Positions 47,307-58,700 of a stretch of DNA of 64,000 nucleotides are shown here, one piece after another. A program made the translations under genes and the position numbers. This DNA comes from Phallusia mammillata (Eukaryota), in contig OZ281494.1 of NCBI GenBank assembly GCA_965637545.1, positions 23,126,001-23,190,000 of the forward strand, given 5' to 3'. Every line of letters begins with the position of its first letter. Within the stretch, counting starts at the first letter, position 1. The notes beneath the pieces were generated by a model. It saw nothing but the letters and a program-made list of their open reading frames with translations. It did not search any database and was not told where the DNA came from.

Positions 47307-50300
47307 ATGAGCGGAAAAAACAAGGCTAGTGACCCCCAGCATCAATCAGCCAGCAGGAAATCAGTTTTTGGTAACTTGTTTTATGGTATATTACGTACAT
47401 TTTCGCATGACGTTATCATATGACCTCAACTGTGTTGCGACGTAAATTCATGATTTTGTGACGCCATTTACATATGTGCGTACGATTGTTTACCAGACCC
47501 AAAATGAAATGTGAAACCTATTATCTAGTTCTACATAGTATATATACACAAAGTACAAACACCCAAAAGAAAAGTGATGGTATTATAAATTATATTGCGT
47601 AAACAATTTAAACTTGTTTACAATATTTCTTCATAAATTTAGTTTTTCTTCTAAGAGTTTATGTATGATTTTTATGAATTTCCATTCAGTGTTTCGGCAT
47701 TGGAAATGTTTGCTTGAACTCTGCTGGTTAAGGTTTTCTTTGTTGTTGAAACTTGAAACTATCCAAGGTCTCCCTGGCAAAATCGTTCTCCTAAATCTTG
47801 GATTTGATTTGATTAAAAACCCTAGAAATATGGCTACAAAGTCAAAAATAGTTAAAAATGGATAAACAGAAAGACTGTTGACTAATAAGTGTTGTTATAG
47901 GATCTGCAAAAAGATCTGTTATGATGTCAAAGATGACGCCTTTCACAACTGTTCGACGTAGACATGTAATGACAGCACAAAGGGTTGCAAGAAGAAAAAG
48001 CCAAATAAAACAACAGCCTGAAAAAGTGGATACAACATTAAATGGTTGCCGTTTGGTTTATTGATTTTACTATTCATGCTGGGTTTTTTCTCATATCTGC
48101 TGTTATGCACCAACACAGTGTGATATATATAACGTAGCCTTAAGGCAGGGGCGGGCAACATACGACGGGATTTTGAGCGGCCCGCAGACAGTTTCAGGCT
48201 TACATGATAATGTAGCCCGCAGCCACAGTCTGCCGCAATCCCCCACTACTTGCTTACTGCATCAAATTATAGTTGTAACCGACAGTAACGCTCCCCAATA
48301 GAAAAAAAAACTTGCCCGTCATTGTTACCATTGCACCCTATGTCCATTGTTACAACATAACTGCCAACCATGAATGTGACCTGCTTTCACGGTTTCCTTT
48401 GTTTCCACATGTGTAGCCTAGTTAGTGTTTCAGCAGTATCTAAGTCTGTGGTGTATGCATTAAATTTGCTGTGGTGAATAATTTTATGTTATATCAGTTA
48501 GATTGTTTGGAGTGGACTGTATTGTATTTGTGATGTTCTTGAATGTATTTGGTTTAGGTGGTCAAAAATCCGTTTTAAATCACTGGATAAATACGCGATT
48601 AATGTATCGATTCAGGAATCTGGCCCGCCAAGTACTTATTTTCCCATATCAGGCCCGCCGACTGGAGAAGTTGCCCGCCCCTGCCTTAAGGCATGAAGTA
48701 TGAGTCAAAAAAAGTTGGCCTACCCAAATATTCAGTGGATATGGACATTGTTTGTTTTTTTAAAAGCAAAAAGTTTATGGGTGTATGTTTAATTTAACAG
48801 ATATTGTCAATAAAACATGGCATGTGTTTTGCTGTTCACCACTGCACAAATTTAACAGCAACCCAAAATCGTTGCAACAACTGTCACGACTGCTATCATC
48901 TGTGCTTGCTGTTGAAACCTCCAGGGTTGGGGGAATTGCTACCAGTGAGGAAATTGGAACTAAAGCAATTTTTTCAATTGCCCAGGGTATTGCAATTACT
49001 GAAGGTTAGTGATTGAAAACTTTGACTTTCAGACATTAGAGATTTGCGAGACACCCTAATTGGTAACAGCACAGGCAAATTTGGATTCATGGTGGCTTCA
49101 TATATATTATAGATGATCAACCTGCCATCAAAATCACAGTAAACACTAAGGACAGAAATAATGTTGCCGAAATGTTGCTTTGCTCCCTGGCAAGTGGAGA
49201 TCTAATTGGGGATGCTAGCAACAACAGTTGTACTGACCTGAAGGAAAAATTTACAGTGCTGCCTCTGATTCTCTACAAAGGAAACCAATCAACAAAAAAT
49301 GTTATGTTTAATTGGTTAAAGGTACAAAACACACAATGAAATCTGGTAATATGTCTATTATTTACAAGTTAGTATTTGGATGCATCCAACTTGTAAGATA
49401 TTGTATGATTTTTTTGAAAAAAAAGGGTTTTGTTAAATTCCACTTACTACATTTCCTTGGTTTAATTTTGTTTCTTGCAGACTGAATTTGACTGCATAAT
49501 AACCAAGGTTACATTTAACTCTCTGTCACTTGCATGGATGTTGGGTATGTGGTCTTGCATGACTGATAGTGAAGAGGCATGCAAACCAATCAGTATAACA
49601 TGGAAAATTCCTATTCAACACACAGGTTTGGATTGCATTGAATCCAAATTTGAACCAAGTTCAATTGAAACACTCTGGAATGCGTAAGTTGTGTTTAAAC
49701 TTGAATTGTTTTGCTTTAAGCAGTTAGAAATTCATATGAGTGTTGAGTTAAAGATTTTATGCAGAATATGACAAGTATGGAAAATGTGTAGAATTCGATA
49801 TCTGTAGAGAATGATGATGAGTGTCTTCTGTTTAATTTAATCTTTTTTACAGATGCCACAAAGGTTCAGATGACATTGTTTTAGTAGAAGAAGTTCAAAG
49901 CCTAATCAATGGTTTACAAGAACATCTTCTTCGACACTTTTGCATTAAGTTTCAAGTAGGCTTTTTAATCACTTTTTTGACATGAAATTCATACCTCAAA
50001 ACACAACTATTTTGAATTGTATTACCGCACCCCTTTGCTTCGATGGTTGTTCATTTTAGGCCTTCATAGCATGTTATTTTTAGAGATTGGATGAAACGCT
50101 TTCTTTCAATACAACTTTTTAGTAGTGGCAACAAAGGTTTTTATTTATATGTGATTAATTTCAGGCCCTTCCATTGCAACAAGTGTGCTTTACAATTGCC
50201 AACATTCATGCAGATGGAAAAATTAAGGTGATTTCCTAAAAATATGTATTGTTCTATGGTAAAAAATTTATGTGATAAAATGCTAATCATACATTTTTGG

Positions 50301-50467
50301 GTATATTCACTACTGTAATGTTTCTAATCAACACACTGATTTTATTACAAATATATTTTTAGATTTTATCACCGGAGCATGTTCACACTGTTTTATGTCA
50401 TATGAATAACCTTGCCCTTGAACTCTTGGACTGGCGGGTTGAAAAAAGTGATGAACAATCTATGTAG
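47307..50467 (+). CDS. CENPL: Centromere protein L
   Basis: Spliced product contains NKTWHVFCCSPLHKF..QLSRLLSS, FTVLPLILYKG..NWLKTEFDC..SLAWMLGMW, LWNA..EEVQSLINGLQEHLLRHF, HADGKIKIL, colinear with vertebrate CENP-L motifs; the first two exons (47307-47370, 47901-48044) are less certain. Confidence 0.87.
48146..48683. mobile_element. hAT (Charlie-like) MITE in a CENP-L intron
   Basis: Perfect 14 bp TIRs CAGGGGCGGGCAAC / GTTGCCCGCCCCTG; perfect palindromic TSD CCTTAAGG; repeated GGCCCGC motifs. Confidence 0.93.
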
Positions 50468-50873
50468 CGTTTTTCCTGTTTGATTAAAAATTTTCTTTTT
50501 TTGTCCTTGTTTTCACCAAGAGTTTTACCTGAAAACACTTTTCTTTCAAAATGCTCTGTTTTTTATTACCAATGGCTGGTTTTGTTCTTTTAAATTAAAT
50601 CTTATGCATGACAAACCAACCACACTTGTCTGTATGTTGGGATCTAAACGTATTTGGTCCTCAACTTTTATAGGACATCTGTATTACATGTGTTCTTTCA
50701 TTTATTTTTATTTTTGATATGCCACCACTGAATGAGTTAAAAACTATTTGTGTTATCATTGGAATGTGTTTTTATTTCTTTAGTCAATTAGTTCAAAATA
50801 TAACAATGCAAATATGTCTTTTTGTAACCTTTGACAACAAAAACACCCATCAACATAAATTGCATAAAAAATG

Positions 50874-53800
50874 TCATTTCCATTGACCAAGTTTTATTCC
50901 CTTGAACAGCGGCTTTTGTAGACTGACTTGAGCGACGTAGGCTATCTCATCCCATGTGTTGCTACTTTCACACACATTGTTGTTGGGATTAGCTGGATCC
51001 ACCACAACTGGTCTGCATTACATTTATTTCTCATTTTATATTTTTAGTGCAAAAAAAATAAAAAGCAGAATATGACTTGCTTTAGTTGTTAGTAACAGCA
51101 TTTTGAAAATGGCTTAGATTTTTGTATGCTCACCCGAATTCAGCAACTTTTTTAATGTTACGTTTTTGGTCGAACAAGAATATCAACTTGTGAATCAAAA
51201 CAAATCAAGCACAGCTTTACCGTGGACTTTGTAGAACCCGTTGCAGCAGGTGATTTTTGCGTGTGTAATTTTCTGTCCATGCAACACAAAGATTCTCATA
51301 ATCCACCAACGTTTGTAGAACGGCAGCGAGGCCATGTCGAAGCTGTTTATAAGAGTTAGCAGTTTCAGATTTGCAAGAAATGTCGTAAAGCATGTATAAA
51401 CCGTACAAAAATTTTGAGATACCTTCTCATGCATTTACTTTTCCAAAAGGCGATTTTGCTTTAACGATCGGATTTTTACGCTTTGGAACGTGAAGTGCGA
51501 CTTACTTTAAAATAAATTGGCTTTCCCGCTTTCTCCCATGTGTGAATGACAATCAGCTCTAAGGTATAAGAGTTTGGTAAACGTCGGTGCCTGAAAAAGA
51601 GGCGTTTAGCAATAAAACTAAATCGCGCCTACGAAAGTCGCACGATTGTGTCTTGTAAGCCACGTGGTTTGGATTTTCTCTTTTCCTACAAAAATAGGTT
51701 TAGCGGCATTGCAAGCTACTGTAATGAAATCCTTATGATCGACCGACTGAGTCACTTTAGAATTCAGTTTAAAACAATGACATATTTCCACATTGAGGTG
51801 TTGTTGGTCCATTTTTCTATATTGAGATGTTGTGGGTTATTTCACTGGAAGAGTAGACTACATTATTTCGTCTTCTCTTTCAACATTATTTTGCACTGAC
51901 GGTCGGATTCGAAGTAAACACCGTAATATTATGGTCACTCTCCTACCAGTTAAGCTACATATTATGCCAAGGGATGCAGTGACAAATTTGGTGAAGCTAA
52001 CAAGTGACGTATTTCCCCCATTATAAAAAATGGGGTAGGCTACTTGTTGAGTGACGTTGCATCACCAAAAGACGTCATCCTCCAGTGTTTGACGAGTCGA
52101 ATCAGCTGACGTAACTTGGTGGACCGTCTCCTCACAAAGTCGATTTGCAACTGAAGCAAGCTGGAATTAAGCAGTTGTATTTCCAAAGGATTTTTGCTGT
52201 TAGCAATCATTTCGTACACTTCTTTTTTGTCGCCTTAAAACGAATAGTTTGTTTGTTACATGTTTATTCGTTGTGGACGAGAAACGACGAAAAGCCTTCT
52301 ATTTGCAATGAATCCGCCTTCAAGCTGCCTGTTCTATTCATAACTCGTTTAATCGTTATTTTTAACCAACTAAGTCGGTGACTTCAATTTAGTTTAGCCC
52401 TTTCTAGGTGGGCGAATACCGCTGAAGTTTCTTTCTCTACATAGTGAACACAAGTTACTACAATTTTGTTTCCGTATTGGAAATAATTTCAACAAACATG
52501 TATTCAGTCAGCGTGATAAAGTACAGATAAGGTAGCATTGCAAACGCGCATGTTTGACGTATAAATCTTTCTTTTTCCAAAAACACTACTTACCCATACT
52601 CGGTGCAGAACCAAGCCAATCGTGACTCGGCATCAAATCGACGTGATGAATATGATCGTCCTTGTAGCACTTATACTGAAACCTCAGCGAGTGCTTTGTG
52701 AGTTTACTGATAAGAATGCGAGTTGCTAGGGGCGACGACTGAATATGTAGTTTGACTTCATTTAGGCAGGTACGAAGTTGCGAGTCGAGGTACTTGTGCG
52801 CCCCTAGCGACAGGAAATTTGGAATGAACATAACCATGTCAAGATCAGAGTGACCTTGAAGACACGTGTCTTTGCCGTAGGATCCGCCCTGTCACAAATA
52901 TCCCATTAAAGTAACACTTTTTTTAAACTGGGAAAAAATCAGTTTTTTTTAAATGCCTTTGACATTTTTTTGAACAATAGGTAGCCTAAAATTGTTTTTA
53001 AACCCTGTGAGGTGGCATTTTTTGTAAACTTATGCTTTCGCCATCTAAAGTAAATTTCAATGACCAGCATTTTTTAGCGATGACCATTCTTACCCGTATA
53101 ACATGAGAAACTTGAAAAGGCAATTGCTCGAGAAGAAAGTCCACTAGGATGTTTACTTCATTGTTGCATTCCAAACTACACGAGAGTGGCGGAATCAACT
53201 CGTGACGTACGTAATCGTCGACGTAACCAGGTCCGAGGTGTTCTAGTATGTTCCAATCGTGTAGACGCAAGGCAAGAGATCCTGCAAAAACGAAAAACAC
53301 GGAAACGAAAGTGAGAATGATTTTGCAGGTTATCCACGCATTCGCAGCATGGGGACGATGAAAGCTGTTTTCTCCATGTTTAACTGATTAATAAAACAAT
53401 CAAAAAAAATGAATTCGGCTTTACCCTTGGTTTGTGTAGTGAATCGGTGCTGTTCTCGCTCGTGTTGCTCCCTTCCGTGCACGCCCCCTAGTGTTTTACC
53501 GCACAATCGGCACTTGGTAGCGGCACCTGATGCAACAAAGCGAGACAATCGTGGTTTAGAAACTTCCCAGAAGCTGTCTTCCTCGACATTTTCAATTGGA
53601 CGAAGCATTTTCGAAGCTTTTGGTGCGGGAGGTTTGAAAAGATCAGGCAAGTGTTCTACCGGTGAATGCTCTGTGCTGATATGTTCCTGTAAAAAATGCA
53701 TGTAAAAAATGGTATTGTATCTTTAATCTTATCTGATTTAAGTAAACTTCTTTAAACAATCAAGCCTAAAGTTCGTACTTACAAGCTTGCAGTCCAATAA

Positions 53801-54090
53801 ACATAATTATTCCAAAAAATCGGAAGCTTTATATAGCCGCTTTTACTATATGTTACAATGCTATCAATCTGTTACGTGCTTGGTAAAATGTTAGGTTCCA
53901 TTCCACCTGGGTATGGTCCCACTTAGTATATGATTTCAGTTCAAAAATGTTAAAGTACTTTCATTTTTCTTGCAAATATCTCGTTTCCACACTTGTCACA
54001 AACACTTCTGTCGAAATGACGGCGTCGCATATGCATCGTCACGCCGGAATGACTCCCGAAGTATTTTCCACACCTGTTGCATGGATACAT
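50874..54090 (-). CDS. OAS: 2'-5'-oligoadenylate synthetase with three N-terminal C2H2 zinc fingers
   Basis: Exons 54090-53959, 53686-53425, 53281-53094, 52888-52594, 52233-~52044, 51590-51506, 51342-51221, 51012-50874; fingers CNRC..HMRRRH, CDKC..HISTEH, CRLC..HEREQH; OAS motifs GGSYGKDT, SDLDMV, VDLMP, LQIDFVRRRSTKLRQLIRLVKHW, LPNSYTLELI..WE, RPVVVDPANPNNNV. Confidence 0.9.
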
Positions 54091-55776
54091 CCTTCTACTT
54101 TCAGCAATCCTAACAATTTGAATAGTTGTGTCTCTAAAAGACACATTTCAACAATGAAAACATTTTAAGTTTCATGTCAATAGACTTATATGCAACTATT
54201 TGTCACTAGACTGATTATGATACTATCTTCCTAAACGTCAAATAACAAGCTTTCCATTAGCAAAGAAGTTTATGCAACGGGTAGACCAATTTCCTGTTGC
54301 TTGATTACTACAAGGTGGCCTGAAAACAAGGTCGTCTCCGCTGCGCTAACAACCACTCGTGTAAGCTCCGCATTGCTGAGTACTAGATTGATGTCGAATA
54401 CGTGTGATTTCGGGTTGTTTTTAAAGCGATGTCATTCCATTGTTTTCTTTTGACGATTGATTTGAAATTTGACCCAATGAGGTCTTTTCAACAGCGAAAT
54501 GACAATTTAAGGGCGGGGAATCAAATGTCGCTGTTTAATTTTCGACCATACATTCTTATCCAGGATGCGTAGGGGAACCCCCTGTACCTAAATTATTGAA
54601 ATTTTGTATTTTATTGTATTAATTTTGAAACCGTGCATGAAAATGGTACATATCAGTAAACGGCTGCAAAAACCGGGAAACGAATTTGAAAAAAAACTTT
54701 TCTAGCTAAAATATTTAAATAAACAGATAAAAACTGAATGTTTGGTTGCCCTAGATTTCTTAATAATTGTGCTTTTTAGTAGAAAGCGTATAGTATAAAC
54801 TTTTACATGTCTTGTGGTATTACTCGAGTTTTTCTGACTTGCTAAAACTACGCTGTTAAAATCCAAACCTTGCAAACGCATACAGCACTAAGCATAACGA
54901 GTAAATTTTGATATCAACGATTTCTTTTTAAACGTGTTTCACCCAAGGGTGCACAAACGCGACGAATTTTAAGGTTATTTTGGTTTACAATTTATAAAAG
55001 GAGCATGTTATTGTTCAAGCGCGACAGCATGTATCCAATAAGCTTAATAAGGTATTAAAAATTGTCAAGTGTCAAGTGACCTACAATGCACAGTCAAAAC
55101 ATAACTGATAATAACACTAAAACATGCATAGTGGAGCCTGCACTTGGATTAAAGTTTCGAAATGCGCAAACTCGCATCAAAAACAATAATAACTTTCGAC
55201 TTTGTGAGTTTATATTTGCATGTTGTTAAACCTAACGAATGGCAATATTCTTAGCAACGACGTTACAATGTCATTTTGAGGTCACATTTATTGTGGTAAA
55301 TAATACTGGTAATACGTAAGGTTAAGAAAAACAGGAGGAAACGCAAGTATTAAAACTATTACAGAACGTAATGTTCTAATATTATACATATTTACCCCAG
55401 TCATAGTACCACTGGTATTGGTACTGTACCAGTCCAACTTATCGAACTTCTCCTCTAAACGATACCATTAGGTAAATTCGGTAGATTGGGTTAAATGCGC
55501 TGCAGCAACAAGGTCATTAAAAAGCGAAGAGTGGCCGCTTTATGACGTGTTTACAGAATAGTAGAAGCTCAGGAGTATTGAGCTCAAGAGAGTTATGTGA
55601 CATTGGTCAAGCATAGTGATGCCAGTTAAGTGGAACCAATTCAAAGATGCTCTTTCGCCTACCAAACAGAAAACAGAAACTAACAATAGTCAAAATTGAC
55701 ATTGCGCATTCCATATAACTTACTCAGCATAAACATAAAAAATACAAACATGATTTTTGGGGAAAAAAGTTACGAA

Positions 55777-58700
55777 TTATTGGTGCACAGCACCAATTGC
55801 TTGTGAAATATTTTCGTATCCATCCTTGTGCAAATGTTCAACCAAATCTTTTTTCATATTGGTCAGTACAGGTGGTCCCCCATATACTAAAGCTGTATAA
55901 ATTTGCACCAGTGAAGCTCCTGCCTTGATTTTTTCATACGCTTCTGTACCGTTTGAAATTCCACCAACCCCAATAATGGGAACTTTACCTGAAATTTTTA
56001 ATACAGCGAATTATTGAGATAGCAAAAACCATTAAAAAAAACAAACAATTCCCTTAAATCTTTAACAAGCATGCATTAATCTTGAAGCCCTTAAAAACCT
56101 ACAAATAATAATTCTGGTCCTTGAACGTTTTTTTGTTTGTTTTAGAGTAATTCACACAACCCTTTTTATGGGCAGGCAAGGTTTAAATATGACCAATCAC
56201 AACTACCCGATAAAGTAAAAACAGGCCATTACATCAAACTATTTTAACATAATTTACCCTCTGTAAGCTGGTACATTTCACTGATAAGTTTGGTTGAAAC
56301 ATCTCGAACAGGTAAACCAGAAAGACCCCCAACCTCTTTTTTGTGGACACTTCTCAGGGATTCTGGTCGTCTAACAGTTGTGTTGCTGACAATCAGTCCT
56401 TCAACGTTGCACTAAAACAAACAAAATTGCTTTGGTTAACATGGAGTTCAAATTGTACAATAAATCACCAGAAGGTTAATGCAGTTGGTTAGAATCGTAT
56501 CACTGCTATCAGGCACACACTGACAGGTAAATGCAATTAACAGACTGCAGGTCACCTCTAAGACAACTTTTGCTATGTCTTGCTTGTCATCATCAGAAAG
56601 GTCTGGGGCGATTTTTACCAAAACAGGGGGTTTGTTTACTAACTTGTCTCTTTCTTGCAGAATCTAAAAAGTTAATATATGATAAACACAAGAAAGCATA
56701 AGAGGATTTTTAGTTCAACAATGATTTTATTTTGATATTTTGTTTGTTCCAAATGATGTTTGAAATAACTTATTTGAAACTGAATGCTGTCTTAATTACT
56801 AAAGTCATTAATTCAAAATATTAGTAACAATGATATGTTGAACTTTTAGACTTTACAAAGATACAGAAAAATCTTGCTAAACTTTTATACAACTTACTGC
56901 TTTACATAATGTCTCTAGTCTTTTCTTCTGTTGAAGGTTTCTGAGTCCAGCTGTGTTTGGACTTGAAACATTGATGACAATATAATCAGCATATTTCCCA
57001 AGTTGCCTCACTCCTGTTATGTAATCAGCTACATCATCAGTTGAAGTTTTGTTTTTCCCAAGGTTGACTCCTAAGACTATGTTTCCTATGAGACAAAAAA
57101 GGTGGACTTAAATGATATCTTTGTTGCTTTTTAACAAACAATATGACAGTTTTGTATTCTAAACTTGTGTGAAATATCAAACTGGCCAAATAAATTAAAA
57201 TTTGATGTTTAGATCTGCTAAATGCTTGTTTTATGTTAGCTATTAGCTTTTGCAGGCAGTAAACTACAAATGTACAATATTTTCTTTTAAAACCTCTGCA
57301 TTGGTGTTGATCAAATTTGTTCAGCCTATGTTTTGCAGCTTCTTGTCCACAACTGTTAAATCCATATCTGTCAAATCATGTAACACATTTGTTGAAGAGT
57401 CAAGACAGTGTAAAATAATTGGAAAGATTGGGATCCCTGTTGGGGGCTTGTTTGGTCACTAACGTTTGCCCACACAAGAATTGTGTGTACTTTTTCTTAT
57501 GTTATCCAAAAGGGAAATAAAAATCTATGTATGATGCATAAAATGACAAATATATTCGAATGCTATTTAATTTAAGTTATTCTTAACACAACCCCAATTA
57601 AATAATACTTTTGATACAAAAAAGTATAAACAAGAGAAAAGTAAGTAACCTGCTGACCTATTAATAACAGCTTTGTCTTCATATAATCTAAATACTCTTG
57701 GTTTAGGATTTCCAATTTGTGGTAAAGGTGTAACACTGCCTACTTCAATAAATCCAAATCCCATGTTAGACAATCCGGCCATGGCTTCAGCATCCTTATC
57801 AAAACCAGCTGCAATTCCCACTGGATTCTGAAATTCCTTGTTCCAAATGACCTGTCTCTAAATACACATTTTAAACTTTAACACAAACCACATATATATC
57901 TCTGCTGAGTTATTGCCTTGTTAGGATTAAGGAAAGTACAGAAAATACAAAACAATTTTGCACCTTTTGCACCAAAATTTAATATTTATTTTCGGGCCCC
58001 ATGTAGTCTTGCTAACTACAAATTACTTTTTACTTGGCATAAACAATGCAAGTAAATATAAAGCGAACCAAAGGAAATATAAAATGCACATGGCTGGGCA
58101 CATTTGACCTTCAAATGAAAAGTCATGGTTGAATTGCACTTAAAGATATACAGCATAGGTTCATAATCCTTTAGCTCAGTAAATGCTGCCATCAGTAAAA
58201 TTTTAGGATAATCTGCTTTTATGTGTATTTTAGTCCATGAAAGGTGGCCTCTATTGCTCTGTGCACAGGTAAAATAAGTTAAAATACTTACAAGTGAAGG
58301 GTCGTCATGATGTTTTCTACCAGGCAATAAATTCCAGGCCAGGGCCTTTACTGCTGCTTTGTGTGCTGTTTCGGCATCAAGAACTTTGTGTATCAGTGGC
58401 ATGAAACAGTTGGCATAAAACTTTTGATTTTCAGTGTAGATCTCATAGCAACAGAAGGTACCAAGTCCTCCCACAACCAAACCAAAGCCTTCTAATAATG
58501 CCTGAATACAAATGTCCATGTTTGGTAGGGTAATAAACCGGACAAAAAACATTATTGCACTGTACTTTAATTAGTAGAGCAACTGTGGCTCTAAAATGGA
58601 AACAATAAGTGAAAAACAAACATGAGCAAATGAATTTTATGATATATATATAGTAATCTTGTGAATTGCATGGGGTTTGTTAATGCCTTGTAACCCATTA

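What the first reader, a model, noticed from the sequence alone, without database searches (positions are those of the whole stretch)
53094..54090. OAS fused to three N-terminal C2H2 zinc fingers
Seen: ~130 aa with three C2H2 fingers (the second split by intron 1, the third after a ~50-aa linker) are spliced in frame to a complete OAS unit. The unit keeps the P-loop (GGSYGKDT), the three catalytic-position Asp residues (SDLD, VDLMP) and the LIRLVKHW signature. Established: vertebrate OAS1-3 have no such fingers, OASL uses ubiquitin-like domains, and RNase L is mainly a jawed-vertebrate effector. Inference: this is a catalytically competent nucleic-acid sensor with an added dsRNA/DNA- or partner-binding module, feeding an unknown invertebrate 2-5A pathway.
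Basis: partly seen in the sequence, partly recalled or inferred. Interest (0 to 1): 0.75.

Follow-up and report, generated by a model that had tools for sequence, protein, structure and literature searches.

The report
Sea-squirt OAS enzyme with zinc fingers
This sea-squirt gene really does join three zinc fingers to an antiviral-type OAS enzyme, but the same layout already sits, barely studied, in databases for animals from lancelets to sharks, lizards and dogs.

Summary
On the minus strand, eight GT..AG exons (54090-50874) encode about 131 aa with three C2H2-type fingers, then a complete OAS unit with the P-loop, three catalytic-position Asp and LIRLVKHW. Spliced RNA contigs show 5 of 7 junctions. 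One contig links the finger-3 exon, exon 3 and the P-loop exon. Exon 1 (finger 1 and half of finger 2) had no RNA cover. It is supported by comparison instead: another sea squirt's contig keeps its ATG, 44 codons, donor and phase, although the DNA no longer aligns.

The fusion is not new. Ciona XP_018673481 (473 aa), Clavelina, amphioxus, sharks, reedfish, caecilians, newts, lizards and canids carry the same three fingers. These are probably the "OASb" group of a 2023 PNAS paper, which found no coupling to RNase L in yeast. That paper's main text never mentions fingers.

The fingers score below Pfam's cut-offs, which may explain why they went unnoticed. Catalytic activity and the fingers' ligand remain inference. 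The gene is a new member of a known but unstudied kind, of moderate interest.

The parts
53959..54090 (-). Exon 1. ATG at 54090-54088, 44 codons. Holds finger 1 (C-x2-C-x12-H-x4-H, 54081-54016) and the CDKC half of finger 2 (54000-53989). The donor is GT at 53958-57, phase 0.
   Evidence: zf-C2H2 at 24.3 bits, under the cut-off. No RNA contig lies here. It is conserved in L013 as 44 codons with an ATG and a GTAAGT donor. It aligns to the N-termini of 14 full-length relatives.
53687..53958 (-). Intron 1 (272 nt), which splits finger 2.
   Evidence: GT..AG. Zero RNA depth. The intron position and phase are the same in L013.
53425..53686 (-). Exon 2. Holds the H-x4-H half of finger 2 (53683-53666), a 51-aa linker and finger 3 (53512-53447).
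   Evidence: The X1 contig 53502-53686 ends exactly at the acceptor. X2 contig record 10 joins 53424 to 53280. The exon occurs once in its own genome.
53094..53281 (-). Exon 3: the N-terminal helical part of the OAS unit. It has no in-frame Met.
   Evidence: Joints to e2 (1 run) and e4 (3 runs). It aligns to relatives.
52594..52888 (-). Exon 4: the nucleotidyltransferase core. Holds the P-loop GGSYGKDT (52888-52865), the Asp pair of SDLD (52846-52838) and the third Asp of VDLMP (52639-52637).
   Evidence: phmmer gave 22 relatives. Joints to e3 and e5.
52044..52233 (-). Exon 5: the start of OAS1_C, with LIRLVKHW (52105-52082). The donor is AA|GTAG at 52044/52043.
   Evidence: OAS1_C at 31.6 bits. 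The e4-e5 joint is seen in 2 runs. An X3 contig ends at 52043. The predicted length matches Ciona exactly, and the donor position is the same in L013.
51591..52043 (-). Intron 5. It is covered by unspliced RNA contigs in X1 and X2. Retention gives TAG at 52042-52040.
   Evidence: pieces 51506-51783, 51843-52112 and 51938-52112. No e5-e6 joint in any of the 4 runs.
51506..51590 (-). Exon 6 (RRLPNSYTLEL motif).
   Evidence: OAS1_C at 17.5 bits. The e6-e7 joint is seen in 2 runs.
51221..51342 (-). Exon 7.
   Evidence: OAS1_C at 26.7 bits. Joints to e6 (X1, X3) and e8 (X6).
50874..51012 (-). Exon 8 (DPANP motif). Stop TGA at 50876-50874. No ubiquitin-like tail follows.
   Evidence: OAS1_C at 26.2 bits.. 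The e7-e8 joint is seen in X6.

Best explanation
This is the single OAS gene of a sea squirt. It is the orthologue of Ciona intestinalis XP_018673481 and belongs to an old chordate family in which three N-terminal C2H2-type fingers are fused to one OAS unit. This family is most likely the 'OASb' group of PMC10400998.

Shown:
- One eight-exon gene.
- Finger 3, the OAS N-terminus and the P-loop exon lie on one spliced cDNA contig.
- The finger zinc ligands and the catalytic residues are conserved across the family.

Inferred mechanism:
- The OAS core is an active template-independent nucleotidyltransferase. It makes 2'-5'-linked oligonucleotides from ATP.
- The finger module, joined by a flexible linker of about 50 aa, brings or holds the enzyme on its activating ligand. 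That ligand is most likely a nucleic acid, with RNA more likely than sequence-specific DNA.
- The product acts on a receptor other than RNase L. The genome shows no RNase L candidate, and vertebrate OASb did not drive RNase L in yeast.

My odds: architecture and orthology about 0.9; catalytically active about 0.6; fingers bind nucleic acid about 0.5.
For: Gene model and motifs.

Splicing:
- 5 of 7 junctions appear in RNA contigs.
- X2 record 10 spans e2, e3 and e4.
- An X1 contig ends exactly at the e2 acceptor, as expected if something is spliced on there.

Exon 1 in another sea squirt: contig L013 keeps the ATG, 44 codons, donor, phase and the e2 acceptor. It is 55% identical in protein, while dS is saturated and blastn finds no DNA match.

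Relatives:
- phmmer with exon 4 found 22 relatives.
- In Ciona P0002 the core starts at residue 197. The window's three upstream exons together add up to about 194 residues (exon lengths).
- 14 proteins of 428-476 aa from tunicates, amphioxus and vertebrates match P0002 at E 2e-156 to 4e-89.
- Every window exon aligns colinearly, with summed identity of 53% to Ciona and 33-41% to amphioxus and vertebrates.

Conservation in the 15-sequence family alignment:
- The zinc ligands of fingers 1 and 3 are invariant.
- GGS..K is invariant.
- The Asp positions are kept in 14/15, 15/15 and 13/15.
- Finger 1 and finger 3 are as conserved as the core: 0.57 and 0.62 against 0.52-0.62.

Fingers:
- A profile of the N-termini hits classical tandem C2H2 structures, best E 3.5e-18.
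- An AF2 model of the Ciona orthologue gives two strand-strand-helix units at pLDDT 80-87 and a linker under 50.

OAS core: the Ciona orthologue matches solved OAS2/OAS1 at E 6e-58 and 2e-40.

Genome: one OAS1_C locus and one KEN-domain locus.

Literature: OASb is not coupled to RNase L (passages of PMC10400998).
Against: - Exon 1 has no RNA cover in any of the 4 runs laid, and the e1-e2 joint was not seen.
- The e5-e6 joint was not seen. Intron 5 is retained at exon-like depth in X1 and X2, which would stop the protein after LIRLVKHW...SLNK.
- The runs are only guessed to be RNA, and depth is low (3-6).
- No finger hit passes Pfam's cut-off, in the window or in the 8 relatives scanned.
- Finger 2 has an 11-residue spacer, not 12.
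- Exon 4 alone finds no solved structure at E 0.01.
- The AF2 model is poor overall (mean pLDDT 53.9) and is of the Ciona protein, not the window's.
- No activity, ligand or product has been measured for any member that I could find. The yeast result could equally mean that OASb is inactive.
- That P0026 is the paper's R. bivittatum OASb is my inference. The accessions would be in supplements I could not open.
Confidence: 0.78

Rival explanations
1. Exon 1 is not part of the main mRNA. The protein would then start inside or just upstream of exon 2, at the ATG at 53701 in intron 1 or the Met in KASKMLRP. The enzyme would carry only finger 3.
For: No contig lies on 53773-54527 and no e1-e2 joint appears in the 4 runs. 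The e1 donor (AAA|GTACTT) is weaker than the others. An in-frame ATG exists at 53701.
Against: The X1 contig stops exactly at the e2 acceptor instead of running into intron 1. Only splicing completes finger 2. e1 is conserved in L013 with its ATG, 44 codons, donor and phase. All 14 full-length relatives begin with the same two fingers.
Confidence: 0.1
2. The protein is not an enzyme in vivo. It would act like OASL, as a finger-guided binder or adaptor, with the OAS fold serving only as a scaffold.
For: Vertebrate OASb with RNase L gave no growth arrest or rRNA cleavage in yeast (PMC10400998, passages). The dingo protein has Glu at two Asp positions and Geotrypetes has Asn at one. Intron 5 retention would truncate the window's product.
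Against: The window keeps GGS..K and all three Asp. The triad is kept in 13 of 15 family members and the P-loop in 15 of 15 over a span from tunicates to reptiles. That pattern is what selection on catalysis would give. The yeast test read out RNase L activation, not synthesis.
Confidence: 0.15
3. The fingers bind a protein such as ubiquitin rather than nucleic acid. They would tie the enzyme to a signalling complex, a counterpart of the ubiquitin-like tail of OASL.
For: There are weak zf_UBZ hits: window e1 at 21.6 bits, finger 2 of Ciona at 16.4 and of amphioxus at 17.3. The helix positions of finger 1 that usually read bases are small residues (Ser, Ser/Thr, Ala/Gly). I read this; the recognition code is recalled. 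Finger 3 with its HxFT tail is very conserved (0.62), as an interface might be.
Against: All zf_UBZ scores are under the 25.6 cut-off, and the e1 hit covers only the CxxCG turn. The profile search finds DNA-binding tandem fingers first. The Atlas look-alikes lean to zf-met/jaz types, which include dsRNA binders, but at scores that chance also reaches.
Confidence: 0.15

Closest known systems
Ciona intestinalis 2'-5'-oligoadenylate synthase 1, XP_018673481 (P0002, 473 aa); Clavelina lepadiformis 'C2H2-type domain-containing protein' (P0023)
   Same: They have the same three fingers with the same spacings, including x11 in finger 2. They share the linker motif SFWEV...R..(F)V, the same OAS unit and nearly the same length. 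Summed identity is 53% and 52%.
   Different: They come from different species. The Clavelina model lacks the last exon. No function has been published for either. Hu 2018 (PMC6307210, passages) only modelled the Ciona OAS, and 'zinc' occurs 0 times in its text.
Vertebrate finger-bearing 'OAS1-like / OAS3-like' proteins: whale shark P0029, Rhinatrema P0026, Hemicordylus P0025, reedfish P0034, dog/dingo/fox cluster P0016. These are probably the OASb group of PMC10400998.
   Same: They are colinear over the full length, with three N-terminal fingers. The zinc ligands of fingers 1 and 3 are invariant, and the catalytic residues are mostly kept.
   Different: Identity to the window's exons is 33-39%. 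Their linker is about 20 aa shorter. They coexist with the classical OASa genes and RNase L. [quoted passage not shown] That these proteins are that paper's OASb is inferred, not checked.
Human/porcine OAS1 and human OAS2 and OAS3 (solved structures 4ig8, 1px5, 9h1z, 4s3n)
   Same: They share the nucleotidyltransferase plus OAS1_C fold, the P-loop, the Asp triad, LIRLVKHW and DPA(D/N)P. The Ciona orthologue matches them at E 6e-58 to 3e-26.
   Different: They have no fingers. They are activated by dsRNA on the core itself and signal through RNase L (established knowledge). The match is far weaker than to the finger-bearing proteins: 96-200 bits against 318-540.
OASL
   Same: It is also an OAS unit with an added non-catalytic module on one end.
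   Different: OASL carries two C-terminal ubiquitin-like domains and lacks synthetase activity (PMC10400998 passage). The window's protein ends 45 codons into exon 8 with no such tail and keeps the catalytic residues.
cGAS (recalled, not tested here)
   Same: This is a working analogy only. It is a related nucleotidyltransferase sensor with an extra N-terminal nucleic-acid-binding extension and a zinc-binding element that shapes ligand choice.
   Different: It belongs to a different family (Mab21), makes a cyclic dinucleotide and signals through STING. No sequence comparison was made here.

Membership tests
OAS family (nucleotidyltransferase + OAS1_C) | OAS1_C domain (PF10421) over Pfam's cut-off | tested here: met
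   Exons scanned apart: e5 31.6, e7 26.7 and e8 26.2 bits (cut-off 19.9); e6 17.5, under it. Profile positions 5-173 of 188 appear in order. The own-genome scan finds the same locus.
OAS family (nucleotidyltransferase + OAS1_C) | P-loop G-G-S-x2-K and three catalytic Asp (D-x-D ... D) | tested here: met
   The window has GGSYGKDT, SDLD and VDLMP in e4. Positions were fixed by alignment of the Ciona orthologue to solved OAS2 and by the family alignment.
OAS family (nucleotidyltransferase + OAS1_C) | Sequence match to solved OAS structures | tested here: inconclusive
   The window's e4 alone gives no hit at E 0.01. The full-length Ciona orthologue matches OAS2 at 6e-58 and OAS1 at 2e-40. The window's joined protein was not searched, by rule.
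OAS family (nucleotidyltransferase + OAS1_C) | Synthesis of 2'-5'-linked oligoadenylates; activation by dsRNA | not testable with these tools
   Needs an enzyme assay.
Finger-bearing chordate OAS (probable OASb) | Three N-terminal C2H2-type fingers in the same order and spacing, colinear with one OAS unit | tested here: met
   Each window exon aligns without internal gaps to 14 full-length proteins. Finger 2 is x11 in all.
Finger-bearing chordate OAS (probable OASb) | Closer to these proteins than to classical OAS1-3 | tested here: met
   Shown for the orthologue P0002: 318-540 bits to finger-bearing proteins against 96-200 bits to solved OAS1/2/3/OASL. Window exons are 33-53% identical to them.
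Finger-bearing chordate OAS (probable OASb) | Placement inside the OASb clade of PMC10400998 in a tree with OASa and OASc | not tested
The paper's accession lists are in supplements, which were closed.
Classical C2H2 zinc finger | C-x2-4-C-x12-H-x3-5-H pattern | tested here: met
   Fingers 1 and 3 are C-x2-C-x12-H-x4-H. Their ligands are invariant in 15 of 15.
Classical C2H2 zinc finger | The same pattern in finger 2 | tested here: not met
   Finger 2 is C-x2-C-x11-H-x4-H once spliced. It is one residue short here and in all relatives. Its His ligands are lost in two newts, and one is lost in dingo.
Classical C2H2 zinc finger | Pfam zf-C2H2-type model over its gathering score | tested here: not met
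   e1 scores 24.3 against 25.2 and e2 has no hit. In the 8 relatives no finger family passes its cut-off. A family profile does hit solved tandem C2H2 proteins, best E 3.5e-18.
Classical C2H2 zinc finger | Beta-beta-alpha fold; zinc binding | tested here: inconclusive
   In the AF2 model of the Ciona orthologue, fingers 1-2 form strand-strand-helix at pLDDT 80-87 and finger 3 scores 57-63. The whole model averages 53.9. Zinc binding cannot be tested here.
OASL | C-terminal ubiquitin-like domains | tested here: not met
   The reading frame ends at TGA 50876-50874, 45 codons into e8, and aligns to the C-termini of the relatives.

The most novel reading that the evidence does not exclude
The three-finger module is the ligand-reading part of a second OAS signalling branch that does not use RNase L. 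This branch would be older than vertebrates. It survives in tunicates, amphioxus, sharks, amphibians, reptiles and canids. I saw no primate among the hits, but that was not searched for. On this reading the fingers select a nucleic-acid ligand that classical OAS does not see, and the oligonucleotide product acts on a receptor not yet identified. The module would have been overlooked because every finger scores under Pfam's cut-offs.
Probability: 0.25. Interest if true: 0.75.

Novelty: new member of a known kind. Interest (0 to 1): 0.4.

Why it matters
For this window the result is mostly a correction. The fusion is real, but it is the ordinary state of an old gene family that is already present as predicted proteins in public databases.

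The family itself is worth a specialist's attention for four reasons:
- It is an OAS-type enzyme with intact catalytic residues.
- Its fingers are as conserved as the catalytic core.
- It occurs in animals with and without RNase L.
- In the one functional test I found, the group it probably belongs to was not coupled to RNase L.

I found no paper that mentions the fingers (searches; word checks). A sea squirt with a single such gene and no classical OAS would be a clean system in which to ask what an OAS enzyme does outside the interferon/RNase L setting.

Tried and rejected
- A word-indexed search with exon 2 (87 aa) found no candidate. The length window of 48-152 aa makes this blank uninformative.
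- phmmer of exon 4 against solved structures gave nothing at E 0.01.
- dN/dS between the window and L013 failed. dS is saturated for 4 of the 5 exons and is 3.6 for the fifth, so only dN (0.26-0.44) is usable. blastn of the window locus against L013 gave no hit. I used this as evidence of divergence, not as a failure.
- The AF2 model of the Ciona orthologue from a 15-row alignment was poor (mean pLDDT 53.9, pTM 0.40). I ran no fold search on it and used only the local confidence of the fingers.
- The Atlas search with residues 1-132 of P0002 gave only generic small C2H2 clusters at 0.92-0.93, with 94-122 of 256 shared features. Those values are in the range that chance reaches, so I kept it as a weak lead only.
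- I considered that the 46-nt piece at 54607-54652, found in deep contigs, could be an upstream exon. I rejected this because it is a dispersed repeat with at least 40 copies in the genome.
- I considered that finger 2 is a UBZ-type ubiquitin binder. All scores are under the cut-off, so it is kept only as a rival.
- I searched the genome for paralogues of exons 1 and 2. Only weak generic C2H2 matches (E 0.04 or worse) turned up for e1, and none for e2.
- I did not build a tree with classical OAS, because no such sequences were held.
- I did not use the third homologous-protein search, the second structure job or any fold search.
Full report
WHAT IS THERE. The finding's span (53094-54090) lies on the minus strand and covers the first three exons of an eight-exon gene.
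- The exons are e1 54090-53959, e2 53686-53425, e3 53281-53094, e4 52888-52594, e5 52233-52044, e6 51590-51506, e7 51342-51221 and e8 51012-50874.
- All seven introns are GT..AG and the codon phases fit.
- e1 starts with ATG and holds finger 1 (C-x2-C-x12-H-x4-H) and the CDKC half of finger 2.
- e2 opens with the H-x4-H half of finger 2. A 51-residue linker and finger 3 (C-x2-C-x12-H-x4-H) follow.
- e3 has no in-frame Met, so the OAS unit cannot start on its own there.
- e4 carries GGSYGKDT, SDLD and VDLMP. e5 carries LIRLVKHW. e8 ends with TGA and has no ubiquitin-like tail.

Finger 2 has an 11-residue spacer, one residue short of the canonical 12.

The joined protein was never made, searched or folded.

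DOMAIN SCANS. Scanned apart against Pfam:
- e5, e7 and e8 hit OAS1_C over the cut-off and e6 just under it. Profile positions 5-173 of 188 appear in order.
- e4 gives only weak SMODS and NTP_transf_2 hits.
- e1 hits zf-C2H2 at E 3.8e-5, but 24.3 bits is under the 25.2 cut-off.
- e2 and e3 hit nothing.

RNA EVIDENCE. Eighteen runs of the same organism hold part of the locus. Sixteen small ones are guessed to be RNA. I laid X1, X2, X3 and X6, from three studies, on 50300-54800.
- Spliced joints were found for intron 2 (X2 only, 37 nt on the e2 side), intron 3 (X1, X2, X6), intron 4 (X1, X3), intron 6 (X1, X3) and intron 7 (X6).
- One X2 contig of 410 nt runs 53460-53424 | 53280-53093 | 52887-52703. 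It therefore carries the end of the finger-3 exon, all of e3 and the P-loop exon together.
- Against the full model, no contig touches 53773-54527, so e1 is not shown transcribed and the e1-e2 joint is not seen.
- An X1 contig covers 53502-53686 and ends exactly on the first base of e2. That is what a branch between spliced and unspliced forms would give, but it is indirect.
- The e5-e6 joint is not seen either. Intron 5 is covered by unspliced contigs at exon-like depth in X1 and X2, while introns 1 and 4 have zero depth. An X3 contig ends at the predicted e5 donor.
- A retained intron 5 puts TAG right after ...SLNK.
- All of this rests on assembled contigs at depth 3-6.

COMPARATIVE EVIDENCE FOR EXON 1. 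phmmer with e4 against 1.84 billion representatives gave 22 hits at E up to 0.001. Several were short open frames from unnamed metagenome DNA.
- A scan of JGI metagenome contigs with an alignment of these (A1) returned 4 loci, all 59% identical in e4.
- Three of the four lack enough upstream DNA. L013 has 10 kb upstream.
- tblastn places e1, e2, e3, e4, e5 and e6 on L013 in order on one strand.
- In L013, e1 again starts with ATG, has 44 codons and ends at a GTAAGT donor in phase 0. e2 again starts right after an AG with EH..(x4)H.
- Protein identity per exon is 55-68%. dS is saturated, and blastn finds no DNA similarity anywhere in the locus.
- An exon that keeps its start, length, phase and 55% of its residues at that distance is under selection as coding sequence of this gene.

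THE FAMILY. The second-best phmmer hit, P0002, is Ciona intestinalis XP_018673481, named 2'-5'-oligoadenylate synthase 1 (473 aa). Its match to e4 starts at residue 197. The exon lengths put the start of e4 at about residue 195 in the window.
- A search with P0002 gave 14 proteins at E 1e-5 or better. They are Clavelina lepadiformis, Branchiostoma lanceolatum 'OAS1', two sharks, reedfish, two caecilians, two newts, two lizards and two unnamed Logan proteins.
- The cluster of another hit, P0016, holds 459-aa proteins of dog, dingo, wolf, foxes and raccoon dog, plus fragments from panda and meerkat.
- All begin with the same three fingers.
- Haliotis (three fingers), Mytilus (one) and further amphioxus paralogues (three) carry different-looking fingers before an OAS unit.
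- Each window exon, added as a separate fragment to an alignment of 14 full-length proteins, aligns colinearly without internal gaps. The length between LIRLVKHW and RRLPNSY equals that of Ciona, which supports the e5 donor I chose.
- Summed identity is 53% to Ciona, 52% to Clavelina (which lacks e8), 41% to amphioxus and 33-39% to vertebrates.

Conservation in the 15-row alignment A3:
- The four zinc ligands of finger 1 and of finger 3 are invariant.
- Finger 2 loses His in the two newts, and one His in dingo.
- G-G-S..K is invariant.
- The three Asp positions are kept in 14, 15 and 13 of 15, with Glu twice in dingo and Asn once in Geotrypetes.
- Mean pairwise identity is 0.57 for finger 1, 0.42 for finger 2, 0.25 for the linker and 0.62 for finger 3. 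It is 0.52 for the core exon and 0.62 for OAS1_C.

WHAT KIND OF FINGERS.
- None of the finger hits in 8 full-length relatives passes a Pfam cut-off.
- A profile of nine N-termini (A2) hits solved tandem C2H2 proteins, best E 3.5e-18. That value is helped by repeated matches. Fingers 1-2 align as a tandem pair.
- The AF2 model of the Ciona protein is poor overall. It does give two strand-strand-helix units at pLDDT 80-87, a linker under 50 and finger 3 at 57-63.
- Weak hints point in different directions: zf_UBZ and zf-met in Pfam, and zf-met/jaz-type clusters in the Atlas. None is strong enough to name a ligand.

CONTEXT IN THE GENOME.
- The 240-Mb assembly has one OAS1_C locus, this one.
- It has one KEN-domain (Ribonuc_2-5A) locus, which I did not examine further.
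The nearest named relatives, Ciona and Clavelina, agree with that.

LITERATURE.
- PMC10400998 (PNAS 2023, passages read) splits OAS-related proteins into three groups: OASa (classical, jawed vertebrates only), OASb (patchy across unikonts, including R. bivittatum and C. milii) and OASc.
- It reports that OASb with RNase L from those two species caused no growth arrest or rRNA cleavage in yeast.
- Its main text has 0 occurrences of 'zinc', 'ZnF', 'C2H2' or 'finger'.
- PMC6307210 (passages) modelled a Ciona OAS and also has 0 occurrences of 'zinc'.
- Eight searches listed no paper on a finger-bearing OAS.
- The library lacks most subscription journals, and supplements were closed, so this is absence in what I could search and nothing more.
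- That the finger-bearing vertebrate proteins are the paper's OASb is my inference. It rests on their lack of a ubiquitin-like tail in non-amniotes and on the species overlap.

MECHANISM.
- Shown: one gene, fingers fused to an OAS unit with intact catalytic-position residues, and conservation across chordates.
- Inferred: an active 2'-5' nucleotidyltransferase whose finger module, on a flexible linker, binds or selects the activating ligand. The ligand is most likely RNA or another nucleic acid. The output goes to a receptor other than RNase L.
- The rivals are a one-finger isoform, a non-enzymatic adaptor and protein-binding fingers. Each is set out with its test in the fields above.

VERDICT. 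The gene is a new member of a known but functionally unstudied kind. Interest is moderate. The window adds little of its own. The family-wide finger module looks overlooked, and it would be straightforward to test.

Noticed in passing
window 51591-52043 (intron 5 of the OAS gene): Unspliced RNA contigs cover most of this intron at exon-like depth in X1 and X2, while introns 1 and 4 have none. No e5-e6 joint appears in any of the 4 runs. Retention would end the protein at TAG 52042-52040. It may be a detained or regulated intron.
   Followed up: partly
window 50361-51070, + strand: Much deeper contigs (depth about 40, against 3-6 for the OAS gene) cover this stretch and are spliced to about 50226 across a GT..AG intron on the + strand. 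A convergent neighbour's terminal exon therefore overlaps OAS exon 8 in antisense. That gene was not identified.
   Followed up: partly
window 54604-54652: A piece of about 50 nt matches deep, unrelated contigs. It is a dispersed repeat with at least 40 copies at 83-98% identity across the genome.
   Followed up: yes
window 55783-55983 and 56256-56405, minus strand: These are the last exons of a dihydroorotate dehydrogenase gene (Pfam DHO_dh, E 4e-16 and 9e-9). It lies on the same strand, with its stop about 1.7 kb upstream of the OAS start codon.
   Followed up: partly
window 50871 and 50482-50685, 52737: The X3 contigs differ from the window by a 15-nt insertion just behind 50871, 3 nt past the OAS stop. 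They also differ by single letters at 50482, 50490, 50685 and 52737. These are probably allelic variation.
   Followed up: no
G000:C1:22293718-22294344 (L014, L015): This is the only KEN-domain (Ribonuc_2-5A) locus found in the genome. It is presumably IRE1, but I did not check.
   Followed up: no
proteins P0016 (dingo/dog/fox cluster) and P0028 (Geotrypetes): The canid finger-bearing OAS has Glu at two of the three catalytic Asp positions and has lost one His of finger 2. The caecilian Geotrypetes has Asn at the third Asp. These lineages may have lost catalysis.
   Followed up: partly
proteins P0013 (Haliotis), P0017/P0058 (Mytilus), P0019-P0021 (Branchiostoma): Mollusc OAS proteins and further amphioxus OAS paralogues also start with one to three C2H2-type fingers, of different sequence and spacing. 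Finger-OAS fusions may therefore be older than chordates, or may have arisen more than once.
   Followed up: no
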